Shown here in pieces: positions 15,791 to 63,969 of a stretch of 64,000 nucleotides of DNA (positions within the stretch are counted from its first letter, which is position 1; each line of letters starts with the position of its first letter). Source of the DNA: Polymyxa betae A26-41. Taxonomy: Eukaryota; Protista; Endomyxa: Phytomyxea. Both the position numbers and the translations under genes were made by a program. The stretch covers positions 9,701-73,700 of the forward strand of contig RBZT01000266.1 in NCBI GenBank assembly GCA_003693705.1. The letters are read 5' to 3'. Under the pieces are notes generated by a model. That model was not told where the DNA came from, did no database searches, and saw only the letters and a list, made by a program, of their open reading frames with translations.

Positions 15791-15799
15791 GCGGCCTCC
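15791..15799 (-). promoter_or_regulatory. GGAGGCCGC motif about 100 bp upstream of the AP2S1 start
   Basis: One of five exact copies found, all upstream of ATGs. Confidence 0.55.
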
Positions 15800-16419
15800 T
15801 CCCTTCATGAACTGTCACATGGATTTTCGGGAAGCTAAAAATCATAGCTAGAGGTAGAGCTATAGGCACTATGAATGTCGGCATCAGTCAGAGCCTATCT
15901 CGCGGTTGGGTTCTCCAGCCTGAGTTCTCGAGATCCAGCAGCAGTATCTCAACTGCTACTTGAGATTGAGATAGCGCTTTTTGGAGAAAGTTAATGAATA
16001 TCTTCTTGCCTTGATTGGCATTGGCTAGCTTCCCTTAACATCCGAATTTTTATGCAGACTCTTCGTTTCCATGACACAGCGCCTTTGGACAACATTGGAG
16101 GAGTTTTGCCAAGATCCCAGCCCATCTCACTCAGGCCGCCAGAAATTCGCCTGCTGCGATAACGTTCTGCTCCTGCGTGAAGCAAATTCTGTGAACATTA
16201 CTATATGAACAGGTCGCTAATACACGAATCTCTAACTCGGTTGCAAGATGCGTTTCCGAAATGCGATCTGTATCTCTACCTGAATCGCTGACAACAACCG
16301 AAACGTTCAACTCTATCTTTGGGCACGCAGTACATAGTATCTCTATCTCTAGCTTTGATTCAGCGTGCCGAAAATCCACTATTGACATTCCTGCTTTTAT
16401 TCTCAACAAAGGATGCTGA

Positions 16420-17950
16420 TCATATTGGTATTGGGTTGCGGTGCTGGCCGACAACGTAGAGTAAGATGGCGGCATAATGCCCAGCTGAGCCCAGCAGAAC
16501 CCAGCAATGCCAGATAATGTGAAATAAGGGCTTACTGCCGCCTCGAATGAGGGCTAGAACCCCAATGGTGTAGGCTATGCCGCCTTGAAGCAGTAAAATA
16601 AGAGCTGGTTCTGGAATCAGCTTCGATTGGACAATCGGAACACCAGCAATGATCTGAACCAATTGGTAGTCAACGAATACTGTCGTCTGGAAATTCGATA
16701 TTTGACACTTACACACATCCACCCCATTGTAAGATACATTGTTGTTGAAATCTGTTATCAATTAAATCTAAACGCATTCAATCACTGCGCTATTGCATAC
16801 CACAGTAAAAAGCTTGTGCGTTTTCATGCAGGTTGTGACGTACAAACCGGCAAACGCTAACCCCCATATTACCACGAGCATCGGCAGGGCAATCACTGGA
16901 TGCTTTTCCAGCGAAATTGTGAGAAACGGTGTGTATGTGCCTGCGATTAGAAGAAACACGCTTCCATGATCGAGATATTTGAAGAATCTCTTCGCAGCTC
17001 GCAATTTGAACAGGCTGTGATACAACGTCGAGCTAAGATAGGTCAAGCAGAGCGACATTGCATACGGCAGAGCGCCGAAAAACACTCTCCAGCTATCGGC
17101 CTCGAGAGCTCGCTGCAACAAAACATAGGATGCTAATAATGCGGCAAGCAATCCGATTCCATGAGTAATCGAATTGACAACCTCATGGATATAAAGATTG
17201 CTCTCTAAATCGACTATGACGATGTTAGGGAAACCCCCAAGCAATGGACCTTTTCATAGCACCTTCTATACTTGTGTTGCTCGCTTGTAGAGCGGTGATG
17301 ATGGATTCACCCAGCTGATTCGATGAAATGTCGAGAAATTTCAGAGGGGAGTTGTTCTCGACGACCGCTGGATGAAGCGGTTATCAATATAGACTGTTTT
17401 GACTAAGAGAATTTACCTAACAGAGGTGATTGTAAGGATGAACCCAATGAGCAAAGTCGCAGATTGACGATTTGAACATAGACTTTATCTGGCTGGCTTA
17501 GATACTGTAACAGAGGCAAAGCGCCTTCCGGCCCGATTTTCGATCCCTGCAACAATTCATTCCAATGCGTATCTATGGACAGAAAACCGCTATACCTCCA
17601 GATTCAGAAGCACCAGATTCGGCAAGAACGGCAAACAGCTGACAAGAAGTTGAATGCCGGAGGCACTGAGTTTCGATCGTCGCAGATAGATTTCTTCGAC
17701 ATGTTGCATATGCACTAGAACCGTATGCAAAGGCAGCATGTCGGCCGTCTGGGCGATCTTCTCGAACATCAGCGTCTTGCTATTCAGCTTGATGGCCGCA
17801 CAGATCCCTGATCACGACCCATCACAAGGTGGTTGGGGCGCCATACGAATCCGGGGTCGTACCGGCATCGACAGGAACCTGGAACCGTTGGCATTCCTTG
17901 ATGTAAAGGTCGAGAACCCGATCCGACTCGCTGCTGCTGCTGCTACACAT
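16420..17950 (-). CDS. N-terminal RNI-like LRR fused to a hemolysin III/PAQR membrane domain
   Basis: The spliced N-part reads MCSSSSESDRVLDLYIKECQRFQVP...VEEIYLRRSKL..LVLLNLEGSKIGPEG..LKFLDISSNQLG. The C-part has EVVNSITHG, SSTLYHS, LDHGSVFLLIAGTYTP, a YLTMGW mini-exon and HIIWH. Confidence 0.75.
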
Positions 17951-18074
17951 GACGCATGCCAATCTGGATTCAGGCTCACATCAATCGGCCGGTCCGGAAA
18001 AATCTCTGCCCTATTATTACTACCGAGTATGGAATCTTCAAAATCCAACATGATTTTGTTTAGTTTTTTTGACT

Positions 18075-19082
18075 CTATGGGTAGAGAGGGTACCTGTCGA
18101 GGACCTCGTTTATGAATTCTATGGATCGCTCTAGAACCACCTGCTGGTCATCGGGCACGCTGTGAACCATTCGCGTTCTAGCCTGGATAATCGGCTTGAG
18201 AAGGATGCAGATTGGAACAACCCAAGCTTGCAATAGCTCGTCGGAAGTTTCGATCGCCGATGATAGGCAGAAACAGACCGTGTTGATGAATGCGAGAACC
18301 TCTTTCATGCGATTTGTCGAAGTCCAACATCCAAGGCTGATCAGAGCACCGATTACGGGAAGGACGAAATTCGGCGAGCACTGCGAAGCTATTCTTTCCA
18401 ACGCTTCCATCAGATCAAATTGACGATCGACGAGCATTTCACTAAACTTGTCTGGTAAGAGCCTCTGCAGACGCAGGCTTTGGGCGAGCACAGAACAAGC
18501 CAGAACCGGCATACGTTCCGAGTCGTATTCAGAGCAACCAATGGCGTCGAACAACGCCCCAATCACATCTCTCCTCGACATGATCACTTCTGCGACCTCC
18601 GGGCCGTCTGCCGAGGCGATCAGTAAGCGAAGTAAGCAATGCAGACATGCATTGACAATATCGTCATGAGATTCATGCATGTGATAGGAGAGAGCCTCGC
18701 AAAGCAGATCGGCCAATGAAACAGCGCCTTCGGAGGCGTCTTGCAGGCAGGTGGACTGCCAGAGAAGGGCGGCCAACAGATCGACAGATTCCCTGGCGAT
18801 CGACCTAGACTTCGAGCTGGCAGCGATCCAGGCCAGACGGAGCAAGAACGAAGGCGTCAGCAGAGGCGCTGGGATCGGCGTCGTCACCGATGACGCCACG
18901 AGGCGCAGCGTCGTCTCGACTAGATCGCTGTTCATTGATTCTACCAGGTGATAGATCCGATCGATGGAGATGGGGCCAGCACAGCATGCCTCCAGGTCGC
19001 ATAATGCCTCGTATTTCTCTTCATCAGTGTTGTCGCCATCAATGATCTGCAGCGCCCTGTTCCTGCCATCACCGCCAGGCAT
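18075..19082 (-). CDS. Leu-rich helical (ARM/HEAT-like) hypothetical protein
   Basis: Open frame of about 335 aa with amphipathic helical pattern; 3' end uncertain (possible intron near 18092). Confidence 0.55.
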   Translation of the reverse strand: MPGGDGRNRALQIIDGDNTDEEKYEALCDLEACCAGPISIDRIYHLVESMNSDLVETTLRLVASSVTTPIPAPLLTPSFLLRLAWIAASSKSRSIARESVDLLAALLWQSTCLQDASEGAVSLADLLCEALSYHMHESHDDIVNACLHCLLRLLIASADGPEVAEVIMSRRDVIGALFDAIGCSEYDSERMPVLACSVLAQSLRLQRLLPDKFSEMLVDRQFDLMEALERIASQCSPNFVLPVIGALISLGCWTSTNRMKEVLAFINTVCFCLSSAIETSDELLQAWVVPICILLKPIIQARTRMVHSVPDDQQVVLERSIEFINEVLDRYPLYP

Positions 19083-19442
19083 CAATCGGAGCGCCACGCA
19101 TTCAAATGTTTCAAACCCAAATCAGGGTGCAAAAGCAGCAAGCAGCGAAAAAATTGCTTCTGATCGAACTGAAGTAATAGCAAAGCTGCAGAAGGATGAA
19201 ATTCTAGAAAACCAAATATGACCCAGTTCATGGATGTGTCTAAAAGACATCCAGATAAAAAAACCGCAGAAAAAATTGCTCTGGAATCGTATCCTCAACC
19301 GCTAGATGAAAACGCGTTCTACTGCTGAATCTTGCATGACTATACAGCAATGCATGATGCCCGTTATCGTATTGAAATAAAGATTAAAATATTTGTCTCG
19401 AAACGAGCGCCAACACTATTCCAGGTCGTCACCCTCTAATTA

Positions 19443-20311
<869 letters not shown>

Positions 20312-20336
20312 TGAGGTCGAACGACACTAGTAACTG

Positions 20337-20366
20337 GGAGGCCGCGCATATTTCGGAGGCCGCGCA
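20337..20366 (+). promoter_or_regulatory. Tandem GGAGGCCGCGCA x2, 26 and 44 bp upstream of the zinc-finger gene ATG
   Basis: Exact 12-bp direct repeat at 20337-20348 and 20355-20366. Confidence 0.65.
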
Positions 20367-20964
20367 ATGCTCAACCTCCCTCGGTCGGTGAAACGTTGCG
20401 CTCCGACGGGTGACCACTGCTCGGGGAAGTTAGATGGGTGGCTGCGCCAGCGCGCCTCCTAAACTTATCGCCCACCAATCGATTTCGTGGTTAAAAGCGA
20501 CGGGCTTTGTAGGCGATGTTATCGGAGTTGCCGTGTGGCATATCCCGTCATCTTATAGAGGTCACCGGCCCTAAGTCCTTCATCGTCAAATGATTGTGAC
20601 GCTGCTGTCCATTGATTGAGGGTTCAATGCGTGCTGTCATCTTGTCGTCTTTCTCAGATACTTGAGGAATCATATCAATAAATCATTCAATTCTATGCCA
20701 GTCATGTGGGTTGGGAGAGACGGCACATTTGTCTGTGCCTGAACAGTTTCTTCTCGTTGCGCTCGACATTGCTGAGCTGGGACCCTCATAATGTTCATGT
20801 TAATTTTCAAATACAAGCGACGTGATGAGGAGGAGGACCCTTAAACATCTTGTAACATTACTGACCTCATCCCGTGACCTGGATGTGGGTTGCGCTATTT
20901 CAGTCATCATCTGTGTTGAGGGAGTCGCTCATCTGATCATCTCTTCTCCTGTCGTTTCAGCGTA

Positions 20965-22461
20965 ATGTCTGATGGTGAGGACACACGTGTAAGAGCATTC
21001 TCCATCGGGCTCGATGTTCTTGTTGTTTTAAGCCTGATTGTTATCAGGTGCGAGCCAGCAAGGCTCGAAAAGCCGAGAGGTTGCAACAAAATTCTGATCG
21101 AAGAAAGCGATTAGGTTTACAAAACACGCAAAGGTGCTGGCCTGTCCCAGGGTTGCCAGCGCTGCCGATTGTAATTATTGACAGCGTTATAGTGACCAGG
21201 AACGAATCCGTACGAGGCAAGAATTTCGAAGTCTGTAAACATCCAGCGATGGTCTTCATATTGGCTCTCTAAATACAGGGATAGAGCTTATTGATAAAAC
21301 GAAAAAGTCTAAAGGCGCTGTGACTGCTGGCAACCAACAGCTGCTTAAAGAACTCCATGAAGAGCATTCCGTGCTTCATGAAAATGGTTCGAATTTCTCC
21401 TCGTCCTAGTCATGTTCCTGATATATTCTTCTAGTTTTATTTCCGTCCGAAGCCAATCTTGATGTCGAAGAGCTGTCGCTTTTGGCAACCATCACTGCAG
21501 AGAAGACGAAGAGAATGGCCGAAACTTTTACTGCTGTCTCAGCCGAGGCAGGTTTTTTTTATCTGAAAGCACCCAAAGTCTATACTTAAATACGGAAAGG
21601 ATTACGTAACCAAGATCAAATCACTATTTTCGTCAAATACACGCATGGATGACGATGATGATGATGGTAAGTTATGCCAATTCGCAAGATTCCCATACAT
21701 GTCTCTGATAGTTTTCGTTTTAGATGGGACAGGCACTACAAACATCATCTGGAACGCTTTGGGAATGCATCCATTAAACCGATTTCTCACGGTGCACACT
21801 GTCGATTTCATTCCAAACGTCATGGAACTCGAAATCGTCGCTGCCCAGAAGAAGCAGGCGACCAGAAGAAATCGTGAAGTAGACACTCAGGTACAAATCG
21901 TATGGGTCGCCTTGTTTTAGTTTCAGATGAATTTGGCGTTAGGCTGAACAAGTGAAAGCTCTCGCTAATACAGAATCACTTGTAAAAACGCAGACTGAGA
22001 GTCGGGTTCAGCTGCTGCTCCGAATTTTGGCGAGTTTCGACAACCATCCCGATTATCCTATGGGCATTCCCCTGATGCTGCTCATTGTCAATCCCGCAGA
22101 TTTCACTCAAACAGTCGAGAATATGTTTGATTTGAGCTTCCTTGTAAGCGTAACATTTTCCGTTACTTCGTGATCGTTGAATATAGATGCTTAGATTGGC
22201 AATGGTAATGCTTCGTTCGTACATGACTCTGAAGCTGGGGAAGTCTATGTATCTACGGCTGAAGCACCCGAAGAGCGTAGCAAGGGGAATAACAAACCAC
22301 CGATTCAGTCGATCATCACTATGACTTATGATCTTTGGGAGGTACGCTTACAAAGTGGTGACCATCTTACAGTTCTAATCTCGACGGTGTAGACAAGTAA
22401 AAACGCCTATGGCATTGCCGAATCTGTTATCCCTCACCGTAAGCCTATGTTGCTCGTGTAG
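20965..22461 (+). CDS. NSE4: Nse4/EID-family kleisin of the Smc5/6 complex
   Basis: LLIVNPADFTQTVENMFDLSFLV is the Nse4_C signature; multi-exon gene. Confidence 0.8.
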
Positions 22462-23393
22462 TTTAGGGACTAAAAACCCATTGTTTCATTTGAAAAAAGT
22501 CATGATTGTATCACATAAAACGGATTCATCACCAAAAACTGCATTTTTTGCAGGGATTCTAAACGAGGCTTGCATATTTACGATCCTTTTTTTAGGCGAG
22601 ACATGAACCCTTCCATACCCAATTTTAAAATTGCTGAATCATTATCTGCAGCCTTTCTGTGCTGAAATGGAGATCGAATGGCCCTCCTGTCTTATAAATA
22701 CCGTTTCCTGTGGGAAGTATTCTGTCTTGTTGAGCTTTCTTTTGTCGGGTTGTATTTTGCAGATCATCCTGTTTTTCTTGGACTTGGTTCGTCTTCGCAA
22801 ACACTCTCTGGGTGCTGCAGCACATTTCTATGTTCGGTCACTTCTATCATTTTAAGAATACGTTTGGCATAGTCCTTGTATACGGTGTTTTATCGCTCAT
22901 CTTACAGAGCATTGCGAACTTCGATTTCAGCAATATATCAGATCATGGCCGGGTTGTATAATCCAGGATGCAATGTTGCAATCTCTTTATTCAAAATGAA
23001 ATACGCTCTCCCCATCAAATTCATTTCGAGTGGATCATATCCGAGAATCCCAAATGTCACACAAATATTCGAGCATTTTCGCAACACAGAAATTTAAGCA
23101 GTCTGGCAGAACGCTGAGGCTGGCGTAGTGGTGGAATCTCGCACTCGGTATCAACAAGAACTCGATAACTTGAACACAAATCGCTTTCAGGAAAGCCAAG
23201 CGGTTCCGGTCCAGTTATCTAAAAATCTGCAGTGTAAATGAAAATCAAGCTTATACAAAATGGTCCGATAAATGTATTTCGAAGCAACAATACCATTTCT
23301 CCAACATGAACAGTCATAGAATGTTCATTATGATATTTTACAGGCGCACGCCATCCTTTTGATCATAACAGCAGTTACGCGAAAATCTGAATT

Positions 23394-26300
23394 ATGGATC
23401 TGATAGATGGCGCCGAACTGATTTCAACGTCTGATGACAAACAGGAAATCGAAGACAATGAAAGCATCAAGAAACCGGATCCTAGGTCGACCACCTCAAC
23501 CTATGGACTCTCTGGCGTTTTCTCGATGTACTCCAAACTAGTTCCGATAGCGACATTTACCAGCCAGGACGGTGCAACAGAATCGTGGAAACAGAAATAT
23601 GACAACCTAGCCTTTTCTCATGCGCAAGAGATTCACGGCATGCAGAAAGACATGGCCGAAATGGCCAAGAATGTTCATGGTGAGATCAGCGCCCTACAGG
23701 AACGATCTGCGACGTTCGAACATCTTGTAACGAAACTGAATGAAACAGTCGAGCAGCAGACCCAGAAAATCGCTTCCCTTCAACAGCAATTGTCTTCGTC
23801 ATTGGCTATCTGTCACCAGCAGGAGAAAACGATCGTTTCGTTGCAGGAGGAAGCTGATAAATATCGTCAACTGGCAAATGCTGAACATGAGCTAGCCCGC
23901 GTTCGATCTGATATGGCTCTCGCCGAATCCAAGGAGCAGCAAAACCTTCGGCAAGATCTCAGCCAAAGCGACGCCCTAGTTCGTGAGCTTCGCGTTGACC
24001 TGCAAAGGTTATCCCAAAATTTTAATCAAACAATTCAATCTCAAAACAAAAGCGAAGCAGAATGGTCGAGCAAGCTATCGGTGGCCGAAACTGAGGCTGA
24101 TCGCCTTCGTAAATCCTTGGACAAAGCCCAGCAGCGCTACAACAGTGATGTCTCTCGCCTTCAAGCAGAAATCGACCGCGCACAACATCAACGCACCGAT
24201 TTAATGTCAACATTGGACCAAGTGGAACGTCAGGAGAAGACGAGCGCGAGCCAGCTTAAACAAAGCCGAGCGTTGACGTTGACCCTGCAGCACAAACTTC
24301 AACAAGCAGACGCCGCCCTCGTTATCAATCAAACCGAGTGCCGACAACTGCAATCACAACTCGACAGAGCTAAAGACGACCTGTCAAGATCGCGATCGGA
24401 TTGTGAAGTCATTCGCCAGACATACGAAGAGCAGCGCATCGCCCTCGCACAAGCCCAAAAGCACGCCCAGGACGGAGTTCGCGAAATCGAAACGCTGCGC
24501 GCTGAACAAATTCGTATTGCGCAGGAGAAAGCAGCAGTCATCGACGAGAGAGAAAAGATCCAGGGAAGACTGAAGACGGAGTTAGATAAGTGTCAACAGC
24601 TCAGTCGGGAAAACGAAGAAATCGTGTCGCTTCGCGACCGACAGGCAGCCCAATTGCGGCGACATCAGGCACAATGCATTGAACTGGAGAACAAACTGGC
24701 GAATGCCATGAAGATCATCGGCCGCGATCAGGACACAATGGCCATTGCGAAGATGTCCATTGAACGACTCGGGTCGACACAAAGCATTCAACAAGAGCAG
24801 AACGAGCTGGTGACTCGCGAACTGAAAGCGAAAACAGAGGAGATCAATGAGCTGAAGGCGGTCATTGGCCGCCATACTGAGCAGATGCAAGCGCTGACTG
24901 TAACGAAAACCGAATTAGAACGCGCAAATGCCGAACTTCGAAAACGGGCCGAGCAAGATGGTCAACGAGTTCGTCAGATTGAAGAAGGATGCGAACGGCA
25001 ACGAGCCGAAAACCGATCGCTGCTTGAACGACTTGGTCAATTAAACGAAACCTACGAACAGCACCAGAAACAAACCAAAACTGATCAGCAGCAGATCCGA
25101 AGTTTGACCTGCACGATCCAGCAGCTTGAGCACGACATGAAAGCGGTCATTGCTCTCCATACTGAACAGATGCAAGCGCTGAGCGCAACGAAAGCCGAAT
25201 TGGAAAGTATAAATGCCGGGCTTCGAAAACGGGCCGAGGAGGATGGACAAAGAATTCGTCAGATTGAGATCGAACAAAATTTGCAGCTTCGCCAGTTTCA
25301 GGAAACACTGCAACAAGAACGTGACGACAACGAACAGTATCAGAAACAGATCTGTTCATTGACGGGCACCATTCAACAGCTTGAACGAAACCTGAAGGCT
25401 GCCGATCAGGAGCGGGAACGTCTTCAGCTGGAGATGAGGCAAGCGGCCCGGGACGCCTGGGACCAGGATACCGTCCTACGACAGAGCCAACTGGAAGCCG
25501 CCGAACAAAACCAGGTTGTTGGCGAACTTCGCGGCGCCCTTGAAGAGGCGAACATCGCTATCACCAAACTCCAGATCGAGTACGAGAACGCCGTTAGCAA
25601 GCACGACCAGCGCTGCCGTTTGGAATCGGATCGGTTCCGGTTAATCGAAGACGAAAGCGACGACCTTCGGCTCCGTCTGAATCTGAGTGAGGGCGAGGGC
25701 GATAAATTGCGGACAGCTGGACGTGACGCCGCCGCCCAGATTGAGGCGCTGAACAAAGAGCTGCAACATCATCACCAGCAGATCACGAAGCAAATTGCCG
25801 TCATCGACGAGCTCCGGGCTACGTTGCAGGCCCGGGACGCCGCCTTCACCGAGCTGCAGGGCGAATGTGAGCGCTCTGCTGAACAGCTGGCCGCCGCCTT
25901 GAAAGTGGCCGACGATCGCGGCGTTGCGCTGCACGCAAAGGAACAAGAATCGCGAACTCGCAACCGCTATAAGAAGATGCTGCAAAAGAAAATTGGCCGC
26001 CATAAAGCCGATAGTCGAGCCGTGCAGGCCCAGCTGCTGCGGCAGCAAGACGAGACCAAGACGCTGCAGAAAGCCAACGAATCGTGGTCGGCGGAACTGG
26101 CCATGACAAAGACTGATTTGCGGTCATTACAGGCACGACATCGGCGTCAATCCGATCAGGTTTTGGAGATGAATGCAGCGATTCTGGCGAAGGTCGATGG
26201 TGAGAAGCGGGCGAGCGACGAGATCGCCCGGCTGGGAGTGGAGCTGAAGGAGACAAAGGAAGAGATTGACATGCTGAGAGCGTCGCGAAACGAAATTAAT

Positions 26301-29313: not shown

Positions 29314-29379
29314 TGGGAGATGGAAATGAGCAGCGTCAGCAACGGGGTTTCTCTCATAGTCTCCCATAACTTGATACGA

Positions 29380-29401
29380 CCCTAAAACCCTAACCCTAGC
29401 T
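29380..29401 (+). repeat. Telomere-like element upstream of the Obg gene
   Basis: ccctaaaaccctaaccctagct. Confidence 0.85.
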
Positions 29402-30568: not shown

Positions 30569-30690
30569 ATGAATACACACGGTCATGACACACGGTCATG
30601 CTGGAATCCAGAACGGGTCCGCGAATCCAGTAGGAGGCATGTGACGTCAGTGATGACGACTGCCCGTCATGCTGGCCGACGCCAGTGCCG

Positions 30691-32633
30691 ATGTCGTCGT
30701 TACATGGGTCGTCCAGCCACTTGATCGATGTGCGCAAGTCGTCCAGCGATCTGGTCGAAATCTGGACGATGTCGGCCGACGGTCGTCGCGCCAGCGCCGA
30801 CTCCGACGATGTCGCGACGCGCATCGACCCGGCCCAGGTCCCGGACTCGGAACGGTGGTCGCTGATGCCGGGCTCACACGTCCGTCGCGTTTGGGATTCG
30901 ATCGTGATGGTCGCCGTACTCTATTCCATCACTGTCGTACCGTTTCAATTCGGTCTGCGACAGATTCCGTCGTTGCTGCTGTGCTGAGCGTTTGTAGCGT
31001 TTTTACCGCCTTATCCGATCCCAATCGATAACTTCATCGCCGACACCATCTTCATCCTCGATGTCCTGGTCCAGTCGGTCGTCTACCATTCGAATTCGTT
31101 CGGCGACGCCGTCGTGCCTCTCTGGCGTTCGTTCCTATACTACTTGAAGGGTTGGTTCGCTATCGATCTGGTCTCGTCCATCCCATACTCTTATATCGCG
31201 CTCACCACGAACATGACCGCCTCGAACGGTGGGCGCCACTGTCGCCTGCCGCTCTCTGCTTGCTGAGCTGCCATTGCGCAGGGGCGATCTTCGTCCCCAT
31301 CAACATCCTTCGCCTGACGCGCTTGTTCAAGTTCCTGAAAGCCATCCGCCTGTCCAAGAAGTACACCTCGGCTGAGTTTAACACGCGCATCCATCCGGGT
31401 GTTATGCGGCTCACCCGACTGCTTTTAACGGTGTTCGTGGTCGGTCATATGTCGGCCTGTCTTTGGTACTTTATAGGGCGCGTCTATGATGATGACCCGC
31501 ACAGCTGGCTGAATCGCAACTCGTCCGATTTCAATATCCCGAATGCCGACGCCTTCGACCGTTACATCGTCTGCCTGTACTTCTCGTTCACGACCCTGGC
31601 AACCGTCGGATACGGTTAGGGTTTGGAGTTTTCCGGATCGTTTTTCAATGAGGCCGCTGAACGCTGTCCTGTGCAGGCGACATCACGCCGCAGACACGAC
31701 CCGAACTTGTCTTCACCATTATGCTGCTCATCATTGGCGTGGTTGTGTTTTCATGTTAGGGTTTTAGGGTTTATGCTGTTTCCTTCTGACTTGGAACAGA
31801 CGCCATGGCGAACGTCACCGCGTTGATGTACGAAATCGATCGTGATTCGCGCGCCTTCCGCAACCGCATGGGCGCGCTTCTATCATTCTGTCGGACGGCG
31901 AACGTCAGCATGGACCTGCAGCAGCTGATTCTGAAGCAGATGTCTCGGGAATGGCGTCGGGCACCTCTCTCTGAGGATTGGGAGACGATCCGCAACGATC
32001 TACCGAGCGACGTCCGCTCCCTGCTCATGTGGAACATCCATTCGGCGACGTTCCGCGCGTCGCGAACCTTCTCGCAGATCGAGGCCCAGTACGGCGCCGT
32101 CCATCGTAAGCTGATCGGCAGCGTGCGGCCCCTGCGCGCCGTCCGCCGCCAGATGATCGCCAAGGAGGGCGATATCTGCAAAGGCCTCTATCTGATCTGC
32201 AATGGGACCCTCGAACAGATCTGTAACGGACAATCCATCGCCATGTACTCACAAGGTGTCAACTGTCGTCATGGTTGTCGTCATCGCTGAAACATCGTCT
32301 CAGGATATTGTTTCGGCGAGATTCCGATGTTTCTCTCCAGAAACTCATCCTGGCTTTGCTCATACAGGTTCGGAAAAAAAAATTCGAACTCTTCCATTTT
32401 ATTTAAGAAAATTCAGGTGCCGGACGGCGTCGCTGTTCCTGTTCATTTCGCAAGCCGATCTGTTCGCAGCGTTGGGTGACTCCGACGGGTGCCAGGAACT
32501 GTTCGTCCAGCGAGCCCGATCGAAGCTCTGCAATCTGCAGGAGGCGTCCGTGAACGTGATGCAACAGAAACCGCCCCTGGTCTGATCTGCGATTCAGGTG
32601 CGGGCTAGCGAAGGCGTCCGCCACGCTCGATGA
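30691..32633 (+). CDS. Voltage-gated K+ channel with cyclic-nucleotide-binding(-homology) domain (EAG/HCN/plant Shaker-like)
   Basis: S4 ILRLTRLFKFLKAIRL, pore LYFSFTTLATVGYG|DITP, C-linker, and FGE motif of the cNMP domain. Both ends approximate. Confidence 0.9.
31755..31772 (+). repeat. Telomere-like repeat forming an intron 5' splice site (a second, shorter case at 31615-31624)
   Basis: gttagggttttagggttt begins the intron. Confidence 0.8.
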
Positions 32634-53573: not shown

Positions 53574-53746
53574 GAATTTTAATTTCGCAGATCCTTGATA
53601 ATGGATTTTTCCAATCTACTACAAGCCAAAACCTAGCATTGTTAAGCCTGAATCGCTGACAATAGATAGATTTATTATATATTATATAATATTAATTGTG
53701 GCAGATATGTAATGAGCATGAACAGAAATAGAACACCAAATCAATT

Positions 53747-55738
53747 TCATGTTAGCGAATCTGTCGTGAAGCATTCGTCCAAGAAGCGAGTTGTGATTTC
53801 GGACCACTTCTCATCGACCAGCTTACAACAATCGATAGACATAATGGTCTGATCTATTATGTTTCTTACTGGTTCGCATGAAATTTCTTTTTCACATTGA
53901 ATTGTAGCAATCTGCCGATAGAACGACACCGTTTCTGATATTGGCTGCTGAAGCGGCTTTGCCATCGAAGGCTGGCAGAATCCTTTGACTCTTCGGATGC
54001 TCGACGTCCTCCATAATGATTTTAGCGGATCGAATAAGGCAAGAGAAGTTTCGCATTCCTGCGGTTCAACCGCAGCAGAATTAATTTTTTGAATGGCCGG
54101 CAACCGAAAAATAAGATACGGTCGATACAAAGGCAAGTTGTCATTTATCGGGTTGTTGGCGACCTCAATCTCATTTAAATCACGAAAGACGGAAAGCGTA
54201 TCTAACTAAAGATCGACTCAGACACAATTGGACACCAAATGCAATGTTATATGTACCTGATAGAATGTGTGAAGATCATTCTCACTGAACGATAGTTTCT
54301 TCAACAAAGGAAGGGAATCGCGGACAGAAACAAAATAGGAAGAGCAGCAGTTGAAGTCTATATAGTGAAAAGAAATTGAAACAATATTGGCATATCTTCC
54401 AGACATTAACACTTCTAAACAAGGACCAAAAATGCAAAGTTGGCCTTTTTTGCTGAGGAACTCGTGAAAAGACGGTGAAGCTTTCGAACTGGACGGCAGA
54501 AGAGTCCTTTGCATCCATGTTGTTCTTACAGCATCAACGAGATCCAATCTCTCTCCATTAAACGGAATATAATTAGACAACCTTGTTGATTTGGAACCCC
54601 TAGTGCTATCTCTCGCCGTTCTCTCAGTAAATCCTCCCTCGATTTTCGGTGAGAACAGGCTCAATACTTTGAGAAGACGTCTTTCATCTGCATTAATGCG
54701 GTGCCCATCGAGAACCTTTAATTTTGGGTATTGCCCCAATACCAACGAACGGTACTGCGGATTAGATCCGTCTGCAACAGGATTGCCATCAAGAGAGAGC
54801 TCAGCTAAAGATTGAAGACTTGCTACAGCTCGAATTGAAGCTAAATCCACGATCCTATTATGTGAGAGGAACAATCTGGACAAAGTGGATAGGCTCAGGA
54901 TTTTGTCATCGATCTGAGAGATGTTATTCCTTCTCAAATTGAGCTCGGTCAAAGAGGCCAGCTTAGAGAGGTTTTCCACATCTGCTATGGTATTGCCAGC
55001 GAGATTCAAACTAAACAGATTGTCAGTTTACCATGGAGCATTGCCGACAGTGACCTACACGCGAAGATCGATAAGAGCTTCGATGCCGGATATATTTTCA
55101 ATCAGATTCGAGTGAAGATCCAGAACGTCAAGTTTTTGCAGCGCTGAGAGGTTATCAACGTGCTTGATCAAGTTTCTACCAAGCATCAAAACCCTTAATG
55201 ACGGCAAACAATCCAGCCCTGAGATATGCCTTATCTGGTTGTTATACAGATCCAAAAAAATTAAATTCGGAAGATGATTGAGATTTGAAATCTCCTTGAT
55301 CGCATTATTTTCGAGATTAAGCAATCGCAACCGGGTTTCCTCTTGAAGAACTGGACAACTCGTGAAATTCCTTCGATCGAGATTGATTCTTTCTGGGTTA
55401 GCCTCACGCGCTGCTACGTGACGGTAGATAATATGACATTCGACCTTATTCGGATCCATCGTCAAGATTATACCATCATTCTGATGGTTTTCCTGGGGTT
55501 TACTCCCTTCAGAGGTGCGATTCTGCTGAGCCCTATCATAGGATCTGATGCTCATAGCAGATTCTGGCCGTTTCGTCCAGGTTAGTCTCGGTCGGACCGA
55601 AGCGGATCGCGCTCGACCTGTTGTCGGTTGTTCGGGCATCGGCGTCTTTAGCGACGACACGACCAGCCATTCATTCTTGAAGACATTGGACTGAGAACTT
55701 CTGCGTCCTGTCCGAGATGAAGACCTGGACCAAGACAT
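53747..55738 (-). CDS. LRRC49: SDS22-like LRR protein, LRRC49-like (tubulin polyglutamylase complex)
   Basis: NPERINLDRRNFTSCP...LRLLNL, LIFLDLYNNQI, LRVLMLGRN, LDVLDLHSN, LTELNLRRN, LSRLFLSHN; LRR cap YR..VL..L..LDG. Confidence 0.75.
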
Positions 55739-56207
55739 TAGCCATGCTCTATATCAATGAATGCTATCTCCATTGAAGGTGGCAGACAGGTTGCTCCACC
55801 TATGCGATAGTATCGTAAGCGAACATTGCTTTCGCCCTCTTCATAAGTACAGTAGCAACTATCGATAAGCAATTCTCTGACATCAGAACATGGATGAGCA
55901 GCAAATAGATGATGGCGCGCTAAATAAAGTGGAATGCAGTTGTCGCGGTGTTAGCAACGGAAGGCTTCCATCCAGAATTAATAAAGTGCATATGTGAACA
56001 ATCTAGTTTAGCAGCCCAGCTCGCACACTTTCCCTATTCGATCTTCGAATCTCATTGAAGGGATGGATTCAGTTGGCAAGAAGCGATTATCAAAAATTCG
56101 TATAGATAGACCGCGGGGCCAGGCGACGTTTTGTGACGCCGTCACGTTAGCACCCTGCGACGTCCGTCATTAGCAGAATAGATCCATCATAGATACATTC
56201 CTAGATC

Positions 56208-59200
56208 ATGGCTCGCGTCGCCGAGCGTCTTATCCTGCTTAACGATGCCACTCAGGGCCTGATGGCTCGTGTTCATTATCTGATGTCCTTCGAAAAGCCG
56301 GCCGTTCTGGACAGCCAGATGGATAAAGTCTGCCAGAGATTTGTGAAGAAATTCCCGGATTTTCAAGTTAATGCTATAGAGAAAGTCTGCTGATGAAACA
56401 GTTCTGTTTTTATTCCTATTGATACTTATTTAGGGACCGGCCTATAATCTGTTTAAACAACATGCTACTGAAGTGCATAGTTCGCTGTATTCATACTATT
56501 ACACCTTGGTCGATGTGGCCCACATCAAAGATGAGAGCCTGAAATTGCTCAATGATGTTGCAAGCGATATGCTCGACCTTACTGTGAGAATTATATCGAA
56601 TCAGCAATCGTCCTTTTTTTTATTTTCATAGTTCGATGTCATGCGCGACTTAACAATCTGGTTTATGGATTTGCTCACGAACATAGTTCAGTTACTACTT
56701 TTAGTCGACCGACTTGATGACCGTAAAGAGTTCATTATCATCTTCGCCTACGCGTTCTACTTTACCCAATCGACCTATGAACCCAACTATCAAAAGTAAT
56801 TCAGAGTGTGACAACTACACGACTTTAATGCCAGTATAGGCTATCGAAGTTCTTAATTGATTGTTCGAGTCCCATTCGTCAATTACAGGATGACTGCGAA
56901 CAAATCTCTCATCGTGTTATTCACACGCTTTTAGCTTTGTCGCCGAGATTCGTAGAGAATTGTCAGCTGACAGTAATACGCGATAAGGGGTATCTAAATC
57001 TTTGTGATGCTCCTGATCATCTTTCTAAATCTGCCTGGTAAGGTGCTGCAGATACGCTTTTACAATGTTAATGACTTCAATTATTAAGTTCCGATCTATA
57101 TTTTGAATTGCAAAATGTGGAACGATTCCGTAAATGGATCTTGTACGGGTTTGTCGTCGTTCCAAGCGCTTTGGAGAAAGATGAAGTTCGCGATGTGATT
57201 CGTTTAGCTTTGCAGTTTGGGCTTGTGATTCCAATGTATCGTGATCAGTTGATAAACGTTCATGAATTGTATGGCGGTTTGTTTACTTCACCAACTTTCA
57301 AGAAACTCAAATTGTCGAAATCGAAAGAGGTTTGTTAATAACGACCATTTCCAAATTTTGCTTTTCAATATCGTTAGATAACTAAGTCGGCATTTACTCA
57401 TGCTGTGAATGAATCGGTAGCGGAACATGCTGAATCACGACGTTTTCTCCGAGCAACAATTTCGGTCTTCACTTCGCTTCTAAATGCAGCTCCAAGCCTT
57501 TTAGCACCCAAGTTTCCTGTACTCCTTGCTGCTATCTCTCTTTGCAGGCAAGAAATTTTCTGGTAAGATTTTCTAAATATTCCAAGGATTGCCAATCTGT
57601 TGCTTATCGGCCTCATTGGTTCTTGTTGAGTTACCTCATACTCAATATATGTTTCAGGTATTTCTCGCATCTTAGCGCTCGGAATCCCATACAGAAAGAT
57701 TGGAGCAAATGGTCTCAGCTGGAAGGATTCGATGATGAGTATATTGGCGAACTGCTGTTCCATGTCAACTCTTTGGTCACATTGGCAACTGCCCGCTCTG
57801 ATATCATCAAGGAATACTACCTTACCTATTTGCGCCAAGGCAAGGCCTTCCGTTGGATTCCACAAAGGAGTTTAATTTGTTGTAGGAATCGACACCCTGC
57901 TTGGTCTTGCAGAAGAGTTAAAGAAAGATACGAGGCTATCTAATTATTCGGCAAATCTTTTGCAAGCTGTCGTCGATTTTAAAAGCGAGAATGAATCCTT
58001 TGAGGCTTTTGTTATGAATTGTCATCGATTATCGGCACAGCTTATGTCTGCTCAAGCTGGGAGTCGCAATCCTGCTACCAAGGCTTTGATCCTCCATTTA
58101 AACTCGATCATTTTTAGGTAAAGACTTGTCTCAATGAGAAGCGAAGTTTGTTTATAATCTTTAGGGCACAATGCGTCGATCTGCTACCCAACCTTCTAAA
58201 GACCTATGGCTCCTTGTCTCAACTGTATTACTTTGATACAGAAGTATTTCTGGTGGTATTCTGTTGCTTGATCTCTAACCATGACTCTAGCTTAAGGAAG
58301 CATTCACTCTGTGTTTGCGTAGTCGAGGACACATACCCCGTTACTGCATGTCATTTCTTTCTATTTATGCGGATGCTAAAGATAACCAGCACCGGTTCTG
58401 TCCCGAAGAAAATGCCTTGATTGCTTCAGGTGATACTCCTGATTCCTTACGATTTCATATATAACGATACACTCTTAGACTCTATCAGATTAGCTGAGGA
58501 AGGCCTGATTGACATTTCCAATGCAGTCTCGAGCTGCCTTCGGACTCTCTCTAGTAACCTCTTGCAAATCGCTACTGAGGTAACAGCCACTATCTTGACA
58601 ATGGACGTGATTGTCTGAGTTTTGTTCAGGGAAATGATGTTGACCATCGATCCATTTCCGAGTCGCATCCACTGGATGAAGTCTTTCGAAGCATCGAATG
58701 TTCACGTCAGCTGTGTGCTAATTTATGTACAGCAATTCGTGGACATCAGGCGATTCGAGTGTATGATCATCAGCTATGTTCAGGTCCATATTATCATTGC
58801 TCTCCATCTGTTAGTTTTTCATTAAACCAATAGGCCAATATCTGGCTCAAGCTCTCAGAGCCACTTTAAAGGAGATTTTTCGAGCTGCAGCGTTATCATC
58901 CAGCGGTGTGGAGATTCCGAGCAAATTCCGCTTTAAATCCAAAGTTATTTTCCGAGCTCTTCAAGTCCGTCTTGTTGTCTTCTGTAATTGTTGCTCACAT
59001 TGGCCCAGGAAATCCAAGCTCATATCGATATCGGAACCGAATCATTGTTTAAAGAAGGTAACAAGTTTGGTTGAATGTTCATTTTAAAGCTAAGCAGACT
59101 TCTCTATGGTAGTATTGACAGAAGAGCTCCAAGAATCCAAGAAATCCGATTCCGATCCAGTGCCAGTTCCTGGGCAAACGACCGCTGTCAATTAATGACG

Positions 59201-59253
59201 TAACATTGTAGGTATCTGGCGGGCAATTATCAATTCTGGAATTGCATGCGCAA
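56208..59253 (+). CDS. NCKAP1: Nap1/NCKAP1 (HEM) subunit of the SCAR/WAVE complex, apparently lacking its C-terminal third
   Basis: MARVAERLILLNDATQGLMARVHY, FVKKFP, YYYTLVDV, KWILYGF, PSLLAPKF; 3' end uncertain. Confidence 0.8.
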
Positions 59254-59284
59254 TGTGCTAACCCAATGAAAATAAACACAATAT

Positions 59285-60904
59285 TTATTCATGTATTAAC
59301 TGGGGATATCTTAATGTGAATTGCTCCATAAGTGCAGGGCACAACGCCTGCATTACATTTCGAATGGCGACGATCTTCGATTGTTTTTTGATGGTGCTTT
59401 CTCCAAAACCCATAGATCTCCCGTTGATCGTGATATCACAACGGAACGACCCATCATGTTGCGATTTGACATCGAAAACGGCTGTTGTTCTTTCGACCAG
59501 TTGAAGGTAGGCAGCAAATAGCGCAGATAACGTCGTAATAGAGCCCTGCTCGATCCTCTCCATTAAATTGAGAACTGCTGGAGATACCGCTGGAGATACC
59601 GGTGCCCCGAAATCCATCGGCTTAATGAGTCTCTCGCGGGGATACTGATTACTGAATTGCATCTGAAACCCATGGTTGATTGTACTCAAAGCCGGAGGGG
59701 TAGGCAGATGAGAAGGATGTATATCTGACAAAGGAGGCGTCCCGGTCCTGGTTCTTTCAGGGGGTACAGCAATAAATGGTTCAGGAGCAGGCGCATATAC
59801 TGGTTGAGAAGACGGTGATGATGGCACATAAGAGCGACCGTCAGCTTCAAATGCTGTATATAGCCGAGGATCTAGTGGCGTTAGCAAACTCATCAGATGC
59901 GGGCAAAGATCGGAAATGGCGTAATCGATGGCATCCGATTGAGCAGTTTTTAAACTCGTGTTGCAACCAGTGCCAATAACTATTCCAAAGACTTTAGCCT
60001 GCATCACAATCTCGTTCCTTTCGTTCTTTCCAACGGCATTGAATGCAACTGATGTCCGAAAATTTCGACAAATATACTCGTGCAGCACGTCTTCATTGGA
60101 TTGGAACTGTCGAATACTGCACTGATACGACGCATATTCATTCACGCGTAATTTCGACCATATTTCTGGAGCAGCCGAACGTATAGCATCCTCATAAGCA
60201 AGCAACTTGGCCTGGGGTTTAAGAGCATGCTGGGCCTGGCCATAAATCCGATTACCATCGTCGACGGTCACATTGAAAAGTCGGTTTCCGAGCTGGCTGC
60301 AATTGACAATCGCCCGAGGCAGCCCCAGGCCTTCCTGCAGCGATTCGAACGCATCGCAGGGTGTGATAACTTCACCGCGGTCGATCTCGCCTAGAATCCT
60401 ACAGGCAGCAACGGATCGTCGTTGAGAATCCGAAAGCGGTGATAAGGCGGCCGGGCTTAAACGCGAATAGGGATGGGAGGCGGTGACAGCCGAAGAGGTT
60501 CGAGCTTTAGTCGTTTTACCGAAACCAGAATCAGTAACCGGCGTCTGACGCAACTTGAAAACTGAGCATTTCCGACCATTATTGTTTGACATCTTGTTGT
60601 CGAATAGCTCCAATAAATCGGGAGCTTCGTTCCGCAGGAAGTCCCTAGCGACCAGCATTTTGGCCTGCTTCTTGTGCTCATGATGGGCGAAATATCGTTG
60701 CGTGTTGGCTGAGTGCAGAGAATATGAAAACACGCCATTCTCAAATTGTTCATCATACACCGGCGATGACTTCAGGTTGACCTGGCAGTATTCATGGATT
60801 AAGGTCAAGAGCTGTTCACCAAGGTCAGGCTAGGTAATCACAGCACCTGCAGCGATTACGGTTGTCAGCTCGCCGGTTTCAATCTTGCGCTTGAGAGCTT
60901 CCAT
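59285..60904 (-). CDS. Protein with four dsRNA-binding-domain-like repeats (single short 5' intron)
   Basis: LIHEYCQ...KKQAKMLVA; G.AQHALKPQAKLLA; LHEYIC...GTGCNTSLKTAQSDA; GFGESTIKKQSKIVA. Confidence 0.75.
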
Positions 60905-61093
60905 CGAGCTGGATCGCTTACTGTGAGATTTCTGTGCAAACCAGTATGATGGTGGGATTGCCTGTTTAATGGATCTGATGGATGAGATAGACACTCTCTA
61001 GACAATGAACCCATCACCAATATTCAATACGCATTTAATAGACCGCCCATAGAAAGTTTATTCGAAATTTGGCACGAGGAGCGACGACATTCA

Positions 61094-61910
61094 TCAACGG
61101 TAGAGATGATCAGCAGCAATGTTCTGGGCGATTTCGACCTCCTAATACCACTCAGAATCAACCTTAGAATAGAAGCCATATGACGAACCCATTTGTCGCC
61201 GTTTGATAGAAGCTTCTCCTTGTTGTAGATTAGCTCTTCGTGTGTGGCGGTGGCGAATTCGAAATTCGGGCCTTCGACGATGGCATCAACTGGGCATGCC
61301 TCTTGGCACAGTCCACAGTAGATACATTTCGTCATATCGATATCATAGCGAGTAGTTCGGCGACTGCCATCAGATCTCGGCTCGGCTTCGATTGTAATGG
61401 CTAAAGCAGGGCAGACAGCTTCACATAGTTTACAAGCGATGCATCGTTCCTCTCCTGATGGATATCGCCGAAGCGCATGCTCACCTCGAAAGCGCGGCGA
61501 CAGCGGGCCTTTTTCAAATGGATAATTGATGGTAACTTTGGGACCAAGAAATGCTTCAAATGTGACAGCAAGACCACGAACTAATTCAGTAAAGAATAAC
61601 GACGATCCCGTATGAGTTAGAACTAAAGTAGCATTTGATATCTAATTGAAAAAACGAGCATATAAAATCACATTGTCCCCAGTTCATAGTTTGCCATGGC
61701 TCTGGCGCAGGCGCCGGAGGCTTAGCAACAGGAACTTGAACCTTCCCGGCTGCTTTTTTAGGTTCTAAGCTGTCATTGGTGGACAGGTTCTTAACGGCGC
61801 CTGGCAAAGATCGAAATCTACACTTATCAGCACCGGTAAACAATTTCGGTAATGACGGACCCAAGCCTGCTCTGCGCTGTTCTTAAAATTGTAAGCGACT
61901 TCGACGTCAT
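61094..61910 (-). CDS. NDUFS8: Complex I Fe-S subunit TYKY
   Basis: [39 protein letters not shown]; [27 protein letters not shown]. Confidence 0.97.
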
Positions 61911-62008
61911 GGGTGAAACCGAGCTCAGCTGGCGCCAAGCAGTCCCTAGATGTGAAGTGGGAATTTTCAAAATTGTTTTGATTTCATACCAACTTACCAC
62001 ACTCGCCA

Positions 62009-62023
62009 TCGGAGGCCGCGCAA
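62009..62023 (+). promoter_or_regulatory. TCGGAGGCCGCGCAA motif about 100 bp upstream of NDUFS8
   Basis: Exact 15-mer also present at 20353-20367. Confidence 0.6.
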
Positions 62024-62657
62024 CTAAAAAAAAATATCCAAATTTTTTCTTCTTTGATTCCAAAGGGGTTTACCGTTTACGTGTTTGCTGCTATAATATC
62101 CATTGCCGTGAGGTTGTTACATTATTAGACTCTGTAGATCTGACGAAGCTCTCAAAGCAAATTCAAATGTTACTATTGAGGGACATGGCCAGGTTTTCCC
62201 ATCGATGGATTGTTGACAGGCGCAGCGTTGTGACATGTTGAGTGGCAGCAAATGGGCCAGCCTCTCGTGCTTCTACAAACATTATGCCCTGGGCATTTTA
62301 TCGACATCTGAAGGTCCTTTAACTCAACAATCAATAAAATGGATTATCAAGGGGCGGTTTGTTCTTGGCGGTATCTATGACCAGAGAACGTCTGTCCCGG
62401 ATTGCTTGCACAATACATAAATTTGGTGACAATGTTGTGCTCATAGTTGAATAGATGAAAATTATCCACCTGGAAATTCGCTTCGGTTTGATCAGAGAGA
62501 GCACCTGATATTCGAATTAGGAACTTTACAAAGACACTGATCAGTGTTTGTGAAATAATGATACTGGATGCAAACGTTCTACGATTGTACAAGCAAGAAT
62601 CCTTCCATTCACCTCAAGCATTTCATCACAACAGTTTGTTTATTTACTGACTTTGCA

Positions 62658-63827
62658 TCATGGTGTAAAAACTGGGATTCCATACCAATCATTTGGGCGA
62701 AGATAGTGGTGATTTTTGTCTACTCCTGCAATCTTCTTCATGTCATCGTCGTCGACTTGGAATCCAAAGATGTCAATGTTGCTCTTGATTCGTTCAGCAT
62801 GGACGCTCTTAGGAATGCAAACGGTGCCTCGTTGAACGGCCCATCGCAAACAGATGGTCGCCACACTTTTCTGATGCTTTTGAGCGATTGCCTTGAGAAC
62901 AGGATCATCCAGAACTCGTGGTTCGTCTTTTCCAGCAAAGCCTGAAGTTCCCAATGGACTGTAGGCCACATACACGATTCCCAATTTGGTCATGTAGTTC
63001 AGGAGTGCTTTCTGCTGAAGATAAGGATGCGATTCCACTTGATTCACAGCCGGTTTGATTTTCGCATATGTCATCAGATCGTACAACAACACAGCAGAGA
63101 AATTGGAGACACCAATCGCTCTCACTAACCCTTCGCGATGACATTCTTCCATTGCCTCCCACGTTTCTCTTAGTTTTCAAACATTAGAAAATACAAATTT
63201 CAAGTCTTGGGATCAAACCTAATTGACACACCGTAGTCGATATTGGCACCATTGGCAGAGTCATCTGGGCTTCTCTCATAGGCATCCAAGCCGACCTTAT
63301 TGGAATCGAAAGCAACGTATTTGAAAGCAATTGGCCAGTGCATTAGCCAAAGGTCCAAATAGCCGACCTAATACCCCAATTGGTCAATCACGACAAATTG
63401 TTTCAATTCTAAATACTTTTAAATCTTTTAACGTCTTCATCAGATGGGGCTTCACATGTTCCTTTCGATGATATGGGTTGTTTAACTTTCCAGTGATGAA
63501 AACATCTTCGCGGCGAATTTGTCCTTCGTCGAAAACCTTCATTCTACAATAAATACGATTGTTCGTCAAGTTTTCAAATCAGTACTTCTTTCAACGCATC
63601 ACCAATCTCATGCTCATTCAAGTAATTGGAAGCGCAATCAATGTGGCGATATCCTGTCTTCAAGCTCGTCTTAACGGCCTGGGCAACCTCTCCAGGCTTC
63701 GATTGCCACGTTCCTGAAACATCGCATCGGAATTGGACACAGAGCAAGCCGACTTGGGTTCTCTCATACCAAGACCGATAACCGGCATCGCGGCCCCATT
63801 CGAAAGCTGTTTAGTGGGGATCGCCAT
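62658..63827 (-). CDS. Aldo-keto reductase (AKR1-like)
   Basis: MPVIGLG|[52 protein letters not shown]. Confidence 0.95.
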
Positions 63828-63960
63828 GACTCGATACAATATGATAATGGAACTTTAAGGGATGATGGTCGGACAATCGCAATCCGACAGTTCCGACTTA
63901 AGAACTTCACCGATCCACCGCCGACGAGGCCTCGTCTAGTCAAGCGATCAACTTCAGGAT

Positions 63961-63969
63961 GCGGCCTCC
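63961..63969 (-). promoter_or_regulatory. GGAGGCCGC motif about 134 bp upstream of the AKR start
   Basis: Exact copy of the recurrent 9-mer. Confidence 0.5.

What the first reader, a model, noticed from the sequence alone, without database searches (positions are those of the whole stretch)
15791..63969. Candidate TF-regulon: promoter motif GGAGGCCGC matches the predicted site of the local zinc-finger protein, which has two copies in its own promoter
Seen: the 9-mer occurs at 15791 (rc; ~100 bp before AP2S1), 20337 and 20355 (26 and 44 bp before the ZF gene), 62011 (~100 bp before NDUFS8; 15-bp identity with the ZF copy) and 63961 (rc; ~134 bp before AKR). I found no copy in coding DNA. About 0.5 copies are expected by chance (128000/4^9). 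AAGGCCGC variants precede RPLP0 (~6618) and TOG-B (~1288), and GAGGCCGC lies in a channel intron (31650). Established C2H2 code (positions 6, 3, -1 read 5'->3'; fingers antiparallel): F4 K/N/R gives GAG, F3 R/S/E gives G(C/N)C, F2 R/D/K gives GC(G/T), i.e. GAG-GCC-GCG, the observed core. F1, which does not fit the flank, is the finger lost in the paralog. Inference: an autoregulated, orientation-independent GC-box-like factor for housekeeping promoters; I know of no description of it in this lineage.
Basis: partly seen in the sequence, partly recalled or inferred. Interest (0 to 1): 0.88.

Follow-up and report, generated by a model that had tools for sequence, protein, structure and literature searches.

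The report
Plasmodiophorid zinc-finger factor and DNA site
In the beet-root parasite Polymyxa betae, a short DNA word (GGAGGCCGC) is over-represented outside genes and matches the predicted target of a conserved three-gene zinc-finger family, which may be the first transcription factor paired with its binding site in clubroot-type parasites, although binding has not been tested.

Summary
All five copies are at the stated places (0.26 expected), 25-134 bp before the ATG of AP2S1, the zinc-finger gene (twice), NDUFS8 and AKR. The genome is Polymyxa betae. It holds 630 copies: 3-4x a Markov expectation (7-9x for GGAGGCCGCG), roughly 10x in non-coding DNA. About a third are coding and 65 come from one repeat. 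The candidate factor is a family, not one gene. Three paralogs (ZF-A, ZF-B, and ZF-C on another contig) and their Plasmodiophora and Spongospora homologs keep the base-contacting residues K/D/R-E/S/R-R/N/K unchanged. The canonical code reads these as KAG-GnC-GCK, matching 8 of 8 called positions; none of 19 other arrays scored exceeds 5. The P. brassicae homolog has the exact 10-mer 128 bp before its own ATG, the only copy in about 30 kb. ZF-A is spliced as modelled and under purifying selection, and its two sites probably lie in the 5'UTR. 'Housekeeping regulon' is not shown: in an unselected sample only 6 of 19 intergenic copies lay within 300 bp of a predicted ATG (p=0.08). Binding is predicted, not measured. 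I found no prior description in papers or scan notes.

The parts
19443..20311 (-). ZF-A gene, 254 aa, four C2H2 fingers; exons 20311-20042, 19986-19866, 19816-19443; helices (-1/3/6) F1 K/E/R, F2 K/D/R, F3 E/S/R, F4 R/N/K
   Evidence: both introns seen spliced in three runs and one of them in a fourth; poly-T loose end at 19343; 13 of 13 SNPs of a divergent strain are synonymous
20337..20346 (+). Motif copy 1 (GGAGGCCGCG), 26 bp before the ZF-A ATG, antisense to the gene, probably in its 5'UTR
   Evidence: the run X7 contig covering ZF-A extends to about 20423 (contigs cannot fix a start)
20355..20364 (+). Motif copy 2 (GGAGGCCGCG), 44 bp before the ZF-A ATG; 18-bp period with copy 1
14163..14792 (-). 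ZF-B gene, intronless, 209 aa, three intact fingers K/D/R, E/S/R, R/N/K; F1 degenerate; no site within 2 mismatches of the 10-mer in its short upstream gap
   Evidence: Spongospora ortholog P0002 is 96% identical over F2-F4
15790..15799 (-). Motif (GGAGGCCGCT) about 98 bp before the AP2S1 ATG, just beyond the 5' end of the AP2S1 transcript contig (15786 in X7)
62011..62020 (+). Motif (GGAGGCCGCG) about 100 bp before the NDUFS8-like ATG at 61910 (gene on the minus strand)
63960..63969 (-). Motif (GGAGGCCGCA) 134 bp before the aldo/keto reductase ATG at 63827
6617..6625 (-). Variant GAAGGCCGC about 125-130 bp before the RPLP0 ATG (6750)
1288..1296 (-). Variant GAAGGCCGC upstream of a CLASP/TOG gene; distance to the true start uncertain
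31649..31657 (+). Variant TGAGGCCGC in a predicted intron of the channel gene; may be chance

Best explanation
GGAGGCCGC(G) is the DNA site of a conserved plasmodiophorid C2H2 family (ZF-A, ZF-B, ZF-C in P. betae). Fingers 4, 3 and 2 lie antiparallel in the major groove and read GAG, GCC and GC(G/T). Finger 1 differs between paralogs and adds no sequence. The factor binds in either orientation close to transcription starts, upstream or in the 5'UTR, of a few hundred genes that include but are not limited to housekeeping genes. It also binds the leader of a family gene (two sites at ZF-A in P. betae; one exact and one near site at the P. brassicae gene), which gives feedback or cross-regulation among paralogs. 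Shown: enrichment, residue conservation, site placement, expression and splicing of ZF-A. Inferred: binding (recognition code), which paralog binds, feedback and its sign (repression is guessed from sites downstream of the start). Odds: about 0.7 that the family binds this word, about 0.55 for feedback on a family gene, about 0.3 for a mainly housekeeping regulon.
For: 630 copies against 78 for the reversed word, and 150-205 expected from coding plus non-coding Markov models (ratio 3-4; 10-mer 7-9), with only about 30-37 expected in non-coding DNA. The single-base neighbour classes at positions 1, 2, 3, 6 and 7 hold 164-312 copies per word, ratios 0.8-1.8. Position 10 is G in 226 and T in 184 (65 of the T copies from one repeat), fitting K at -1. 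Flanks of 30 sampled copies are mostly unrelated. The -1/3/6 residues of F2-F4 are identical in six proteins of three genera while the finger region diverges to 65%. The code (Arg/Lys/His for G, Asn/Gln for A, Asp/Glu for C, small residues variable; PMC12264921; Lys allowed G or T from my own knowledge) gives 8 of 8 called positions; the best of 19 other arrays matches at most 5; a shuffled target matches in 0.5% of cases. The P. brassicae homolog has the exact 10-mer 128 bp before its ATG, the only exact copy in about 30 kb and about 20 promoters, plus GGAGGTCGCG at -35; chance for a 150-bp promoter is 0.0006-0.002. A GAAGGCCGC variant lies 56 bp before P. brassicae PAC3. Unselected copies lie 105 bp before MBF1 and about 60 bp before a PH-domain gene.
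Against: No binding data. C2H2 code predictions are error-prone, and Tyr at +2 of F4 can displace a finger (PMC12264921). The strongly preferred leading G is not explained by three canonical fingers. In the unselected sample only 3 of 19 intergenic copies were within 150 bp and 6 of 19 within 300 bp of a predicted ATG (background 9% and 17%; p=0.26 and 0.08), though that sample comes from contigs C1-C49, many short or repeat-bearing, and my gene finder under-calls. The P. betae ortholog of the P. brassicae gene (ZF-C) has no exact site in 986 bp upstream, so the conservation is at family level and rests on one comparison. Repeats and transposons supply at least 10% of the copies. Only about 22 of roughly 45-50 zinc-finger loci in the genome were scored.
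Confidence: 0.65

Rival explanations
1. The motif is a real cis-element but is read by another protein (an unscored zinc-finger or another DNA-binding domain), and the code match to this family is coincidence.
For: About half of the genome's C2H2 loci were not scored. The leading G is unexplained.
Against: 8 of 8 called positions match, unique among 22 arrays, with a 0.5% shuffled-target rate. The site recurs before a family gene in a second genus.
Confidence: 0.15
2. The family binds the word, but its main targets are transposons and repeats (silencing, or elements that co-opted the site), and promoter copies are a minority or derive from elements.
For: 65 copies lie in one contig-end repeat, copies sit before the ORFs of a DIRS-like tyrosine-recombinase element (L005-L007) and in another repeat (L019/L024). 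Many sampled intergenic copies have no predicted gene start nearby.
Against: Most sampled flanks are unique. The helices are invariant across three genera, unlike fingers in an arms race with elements (own knowledge). Sites sit before single-copy housekeeping genes and before the factor itself.
Confidence: 0.1
3. There is no cis-element: the excess comes from codon pairs (Glu-Ala-Ala, Ala-Ala-Ser), GC-rich islands and repeats, and the window cluster is luck.
For: About a third of sampled copies are coding. GGAGGC[AGT]GC is also 3x its reversed control, so the reversed control overstates the enrichment.
Against: Coding models account for only 120-170 copies, and about two thirds of the sample is non-coding against about 35 expected. 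The window holds 5 non-coding copies against 0.26 expected.
Confidence: 0.06
4. At ZF-A the two copies act as RNA: a 5'UTR hairpin or a protein-binding element.
For: The copies are probably transcribed and can pair with an upstream purine run.
Against: Folding z-score is -1.24, with 21 of 200 shuffles as stable. The motif occurs in both orientations relative to genes.
Confidence: 0.04

Closest known systems
Sp1/KLF GC-box factors
   Same: Three tandem C2H2 fingers read a 9-10 bp G-rich word near starts in either orientation; self-regulation is known in the family (own knowledge).
   Different: Helix signature is KHA-RER-RHK (PMC12264921) against KDR-ESR-RNK here. The site is GGGGCGGGG-like. 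No homology beyond the generic finger.
ZFX/ZFY/ZNF711
   Same: The last three fingers are necessary and sufficient for binding. The motif contains AGGCC. Binding is downstream of the start at many housekeeping promoters (PMC7293018).
   Different: 13 fingers, an acidic activation domain, motif AGGCCTAG, a binding peak at +240 in CpG islands. No ZFX-like protein appeared as an ortholog. Analogy only.
EGR1/Zif268-type three-finger arrays
   Same: Canonical TGE(R/K)P linkers and 12-residue spacing, so the same antiparallel triplet reading is expected (one search lists these structures as generic relatives).
   Different: RER-RHT-RER helices and a GCG(T/G)GGGCG site (own knowledge).
Fungal Crz1 and animal YY1/E4F1 (leads from memory)
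   Same: Crz1 has a finger resembling F4 (R-x-Y-N) and binds a GAGGC-type element. YY1 has four fingers and binds near starts. E4F1 has E-x-G-S-L-x-R helices like F3.
   Different: Finger order and the other helices differ. None was recovered as an ortholog. Not tested further.

Membership tests
Classical tandem C2H2 zinc-finger DNA-binding proteins | C-x2-4-C-x12-H-x3-5-H fingers matching PF00096/PF13465 | tested here: met
Classical tandem C2H2 zinc-finger DNA-binding proteins | Canonical TGE(K/R)P(Y/F) linkers between adjacent fingers | tested here: met
   F2-F3 and F3-F4 linkers are TGERPY or TGEKPF in all six proteins; the F1-F2 linker is SGARPF, SGERPF or TGERTF in the four-finger proteins
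Classical tandem C2H2 zinc-finger DNA-binding proteins | Conserved base-contacting residues at -1, 3 and 6 | tested here: met
   invariant KDR-ESR-RNK in three genera
Classical tandem C2H2 zinc-finger DNA-binding proteins | Sequence-specific binding to the predicted site | not testable with these tools
   only a code-based match
Sp/KLF family | Three C-terminal fingers with KHA-RER-RHK helices | tested here: not met
   helices are KDR-ESR-RNK (signature from PMC12264921)
ZFX/ZFY/ZNF711 family | 13 fingers, N-terminal acidic domain, AGGCCTAG motif | tested here: not met
   3-4 fingers, 200-313 aa; the motif continues GC, not TAG
Autoregulated transcription factor | Own site in own promoter, conserved between species | tested here: inconclusive
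   present at P. betae ZF-A (2 copies) and P. brassicae ZF-C, absent at P. betae ZF-C and ZF-B
Autoregulated transcription factor | Change of own transcription on binding | not testable with these tools
   needs a reporter or perturbation
Promoter-proximal (housekeeping) element | Genome-wide positional peak near transcription starts | tested here: inconclusive
Promoter-proximal (housekeeping) element | Orientation independence | tested here: met
   sense at AP2S1, AKR, MBF1 and P. brassicae ZF-C; antisense at ZF-A, NDUFS8, RPLP0 and L017

The most novel reading that the evidence does not exclude
A plasmodiophorid-specific C2H2 family acts as a general promoter factor, a functional counterpart of Sp1 or ZFX that arose independently in Rhizaria. 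It marks several hundred promoters, its three paralogs compete for one site and control each other through sites in their leaders, and resident transposons have captured the same site.
Probability: 0.3. Interest if true: 0.75.

Novelty: new member of a known kind. Interest (0 to 1): 0.58.

Why it matters
Phytomyxids (clubroot, powdery scab, the rhizomania vector) cannot be cultured apart from their hosts, and my paper searches found no described promoter element or factor-site pair for them. A conserved factor with a precise predicted site gives a cheap in vitro test, a first marker for annotating their promoters, and a natural test of the C2H2 recognition code far from animals and fungi. The mechanism itself, a zinc-finger factor on a GC-rich box with feedback, is ordinary.

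Tried and rejected
The metagenome scan gave only generic zinc-finger loci at about 50% identity, none with the signature. The NDUFS8 homolog search was wasted by too strict a threshold, so orthologous promoters of target genes were not compared. The search with the neighbouring gene's product gave one short contig and no synteny. The Spongospora protein P0002 has no contig on record; P0125 was not looked up. The reversed-word control (8x) was rejected as the measure of enrichment because a codon effect inflates it; Markov expectations were used instead. A longer consensus was rejected: NGC follows in 40 of 630 and GCA in 19 of 226. A single repeat origin was rejected. An RNA hairpin is not supported. 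I recalled the engineered helix ERGTLAR as a GCC reader resembling F3, but could not confirm its target in the one paper found, so it is not used as evidence.
Full report
Source. The window is G000:C340:9701-73700 of an assembly of 27,085,814 bases in 1,001 contigs. This matches the Polymyxa betae draft (27,085,946 bp, 1,001 contigs, 45.1% GC; PMC6328671), and the closest homologs of the zinc-finger genes are from Spongospora subterranea and Plasmodiophora brassicae.

Observation. All five are non-coding and lie 25-134 bp before an ATG: AP2S1, ZF-A twice, NDUFS8 and AKR. Pfam supports the names. The variants at 6617 (about 125-130 bp before RPLP0), 1288 and 31650 are present. The 7-mer core alone is hardly enriched (11 against 5.8), so the signal lies in the full 9-mer.

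Genome-wide counts. There are 630 copies, evenly split between strands, against 78 for the reversed word. That control is too kind, because the word also spells Glu-Ala-Ala and Ala-Ala-Ser. I trained a small gene finder on 215 kb of genome in hand (it recovers ZF-A exactly but merges and misses some genes) and computed Markov expectations assuming 45% coding DNA: 117-169 coding plus 29-37 non-coding copies, a ratio of 3-4, and 7-9 for GGAGGCCGCG (226 copies). Single-base neighbour classes at positions 1, 2, 3, 6 and 7 have ratios of 0.8-1.8; positions 4, 5, 8 and 9 were not tested. About a third of 30 sampled copies are coding, close to the coding expectation, which leaves roughly 400 non-coding copies, about ten times expectation. 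Sixty-five of these come from one repeat found mostly at contig ends, and a few from a DIRS-like element and another repeat. The remaining sampled flanks are unique. Position 10 prefers G (226), then T (184, or about 120 without the repeat), with A plus C at 220. No further consensus follows.

Position. In the window all five copies are promoter-proximal, but the window was chosen for that reason. Among the first 30 genome copies, 19 were intergenic by my model; 3 lay within 150 bp and 6 within 300 bp of a predicted ATG (background 9% and 17%; p=0.26 and 0.08). Clear cases include MBF1 at 105 bp and a PH-domain gene at about 60 bp. Others precede secreted-protein genes or transposon ORFs, or have no called gene nearby. 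The sample comes from contigs C1-C49, many short or repeat-bearing, and the gene finder under-calls, so this neither proves nor excludes a promoter peak. A whole-genome test could not be run.

The factor. ZF-A (20311-19443, minus strand, two introns) has four fingers. Contigs from public runs show both introns spliced and a poly-T end at 19343, and all 13 differences of a divergent strain are synonymous. In run X7 the contig covering ZF-A runs to about 20423 and another contig starts near 20461, with a GT-AG intron of a plus-strand gene at 20988-21048. This puts both sites probably in the ZF-A 5'UTR, next to a short divergent promoter; contigs cannot fix starts. The AP2S1 contig of X7 ends at 15786, five bases short of its site. 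ZF-B (14792-14163) has three fingers. A genome search for PF00096 revealed a third paralog, ZF-C (contig C457, L055), with the same two intron positions as ZF-A. ZF-C is the ortholog of P. brassicae P0093 and Spongospora P0125 (shared C-terminus, 95-96% identity over F2-F4). ZF-B pairs with Spongospora P0002 (96%). ZF-A is 83-86% identical to the ZF-C group. Residues -1, 3 and 6 of F2-F4 are identical in all six proteins, while F1 varies (K/E/R, K/D/R, S/N/H, or degenerate). No non-plasmodiophorid hit of the first homolog list or of the metagenome loci carried two of the three helices; the second list was not scanned for them. The joined, spliced ZF-A model was not used as a search query; searches were by reference only.

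Code match. With Arg/Lys/His for G, Asn/Gln for A, Asp/Glu for C and small residues uncalled (PMC12264921; Lys allowed G or T from my own knowledge), F4-F3-F2 read KAG GnC GCK. This matches GAGGCCGCG at 8 of 8 called positions. The best of 19 other arrays matches at most 5 positions (net score 4), and a shuffled target matches fully in 0.5% of cases. The leading G is not explained. The GAAGGCCGC and GGAGGTCGC variants differ at positions read by Lys and by the uncalled Ser, which is where a finger would be expected to tolerate change (inference).

Second species. In about 30 kb of P. brassicae around P0093 (about 20 promoters, 61% GC) the only exact copy is a full 10-mer 128 bp before the ATG of the zinc-finger gene itself, with GGAGGTCGCG at -35. 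A GAAGGCCGC variant lies 56 bp before PAC3. Chance for one 150-bp promoter is 0.0006-0.002. This test was made after the hypothesis was fixed and is the strongest independent support. Its limit is that the P. betae ortholog ZF-C has no exact site within 986 bp, while paralog ZF-A has two. The simplest reading is an ancestral feedback site kept by different duplicates, or cross-regulation among paralogs that share one specificity.

Mechanism and rivals. Most likely one or more of the three paralogs bind the double-stranded word through F2-F4 near transcription starts and on a family gene's leader (0.65 overall). Rivals are another binder (0.15), a mainly transposon-directed role (0.10), a compositional artefact (0.06) and an RNA element (0.04; z=-1.24).

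Comparison and novelty. It works like Sp1/KLF or ZFX (PMC7293018) but fails the membership features of both. It is a classical C2H2 array with its own lineage-restricted signature. Paper searches found no description of the motif or of any factor-site pair in plasmodiophorids, and the scan's notes hold no earlier report of this motif on other DNA. Verdict: a real motif with a well-supported candidate factor family, new for the lineage and ordinary in kind. The housekeeping-regulon claim is open.

Noticed in passing
L026:1495-1515 (G000 C47 end) and 64 other places: A repeat found mostly within 100-250 bases of contig ends carries the 9-mer in a fixed 18-base context; 59 exact copies and 6 with one mismatch. 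Element type not identified.
   Followed up: partly
L005-L007 (G000 C18 13-22 kb): Tyrosine-recombinase (weak PF00589 hit) element of DIRS-like appearance in several copies, each with GGAGGCCGCG upstream of an ORF.
   Followed up: partly
L032:1326-2948 (G000 C273): Eight copies of TGTAACGT/ACGTTACA around and upstream of a two-finger C2H2 gene (helices R/N/R, L/N/R); it is the top de novo 8-mer in intergenic DNA of my sample. Scan note s1-673903 reports a similar GTAACGTTAC cluster.
   Followed up: no
window 5782, 26441, 29386, 31616, 31756, 34454, 46383 and several loci: Telo-box-like AACCCTAA words are frequent, often in GC-rich genes and their introns.
   Followed up: no
window 4808-4838: Two tandem GGAGGCTCCCC boxes about 130-160 bp before a predicted hydrolase-like gene; they share GGAGGC with the motif but break F3/F2 of the predicted site (scan note s1-674984; seen).
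   Followed up: partly
window 14163-15692: ZF-B lies about 435 bp behind the AP2S1 stop on the same strand, and one spliced contig (X3, 1,560 bases) is long enough to span both, so ZF-B may be read through from the motif-bearing AP2S1 promoter; a contig cannot prove a single transcript.
   Followed up: partly
window 1-747 and 1856-2950: Two tandem, related CLASP/TOG-like genes (their translations share long similar stretches).
   Followed up: no
L042:599, L046:738, L057:2281: One-mismatch variants (AGAGGCCGC, GGAGGTCGC) lie 60, 63 and 226 bp before predicted starts at other zinc-finger loci, hinting at regulation of further factors.
   Followed up: partly
window 20461-22461 (+): A spliced plus-strand gene diverges from ZF-A (intron 20988-21048); no Pfam hit for the exon tested.
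   Followed up: no
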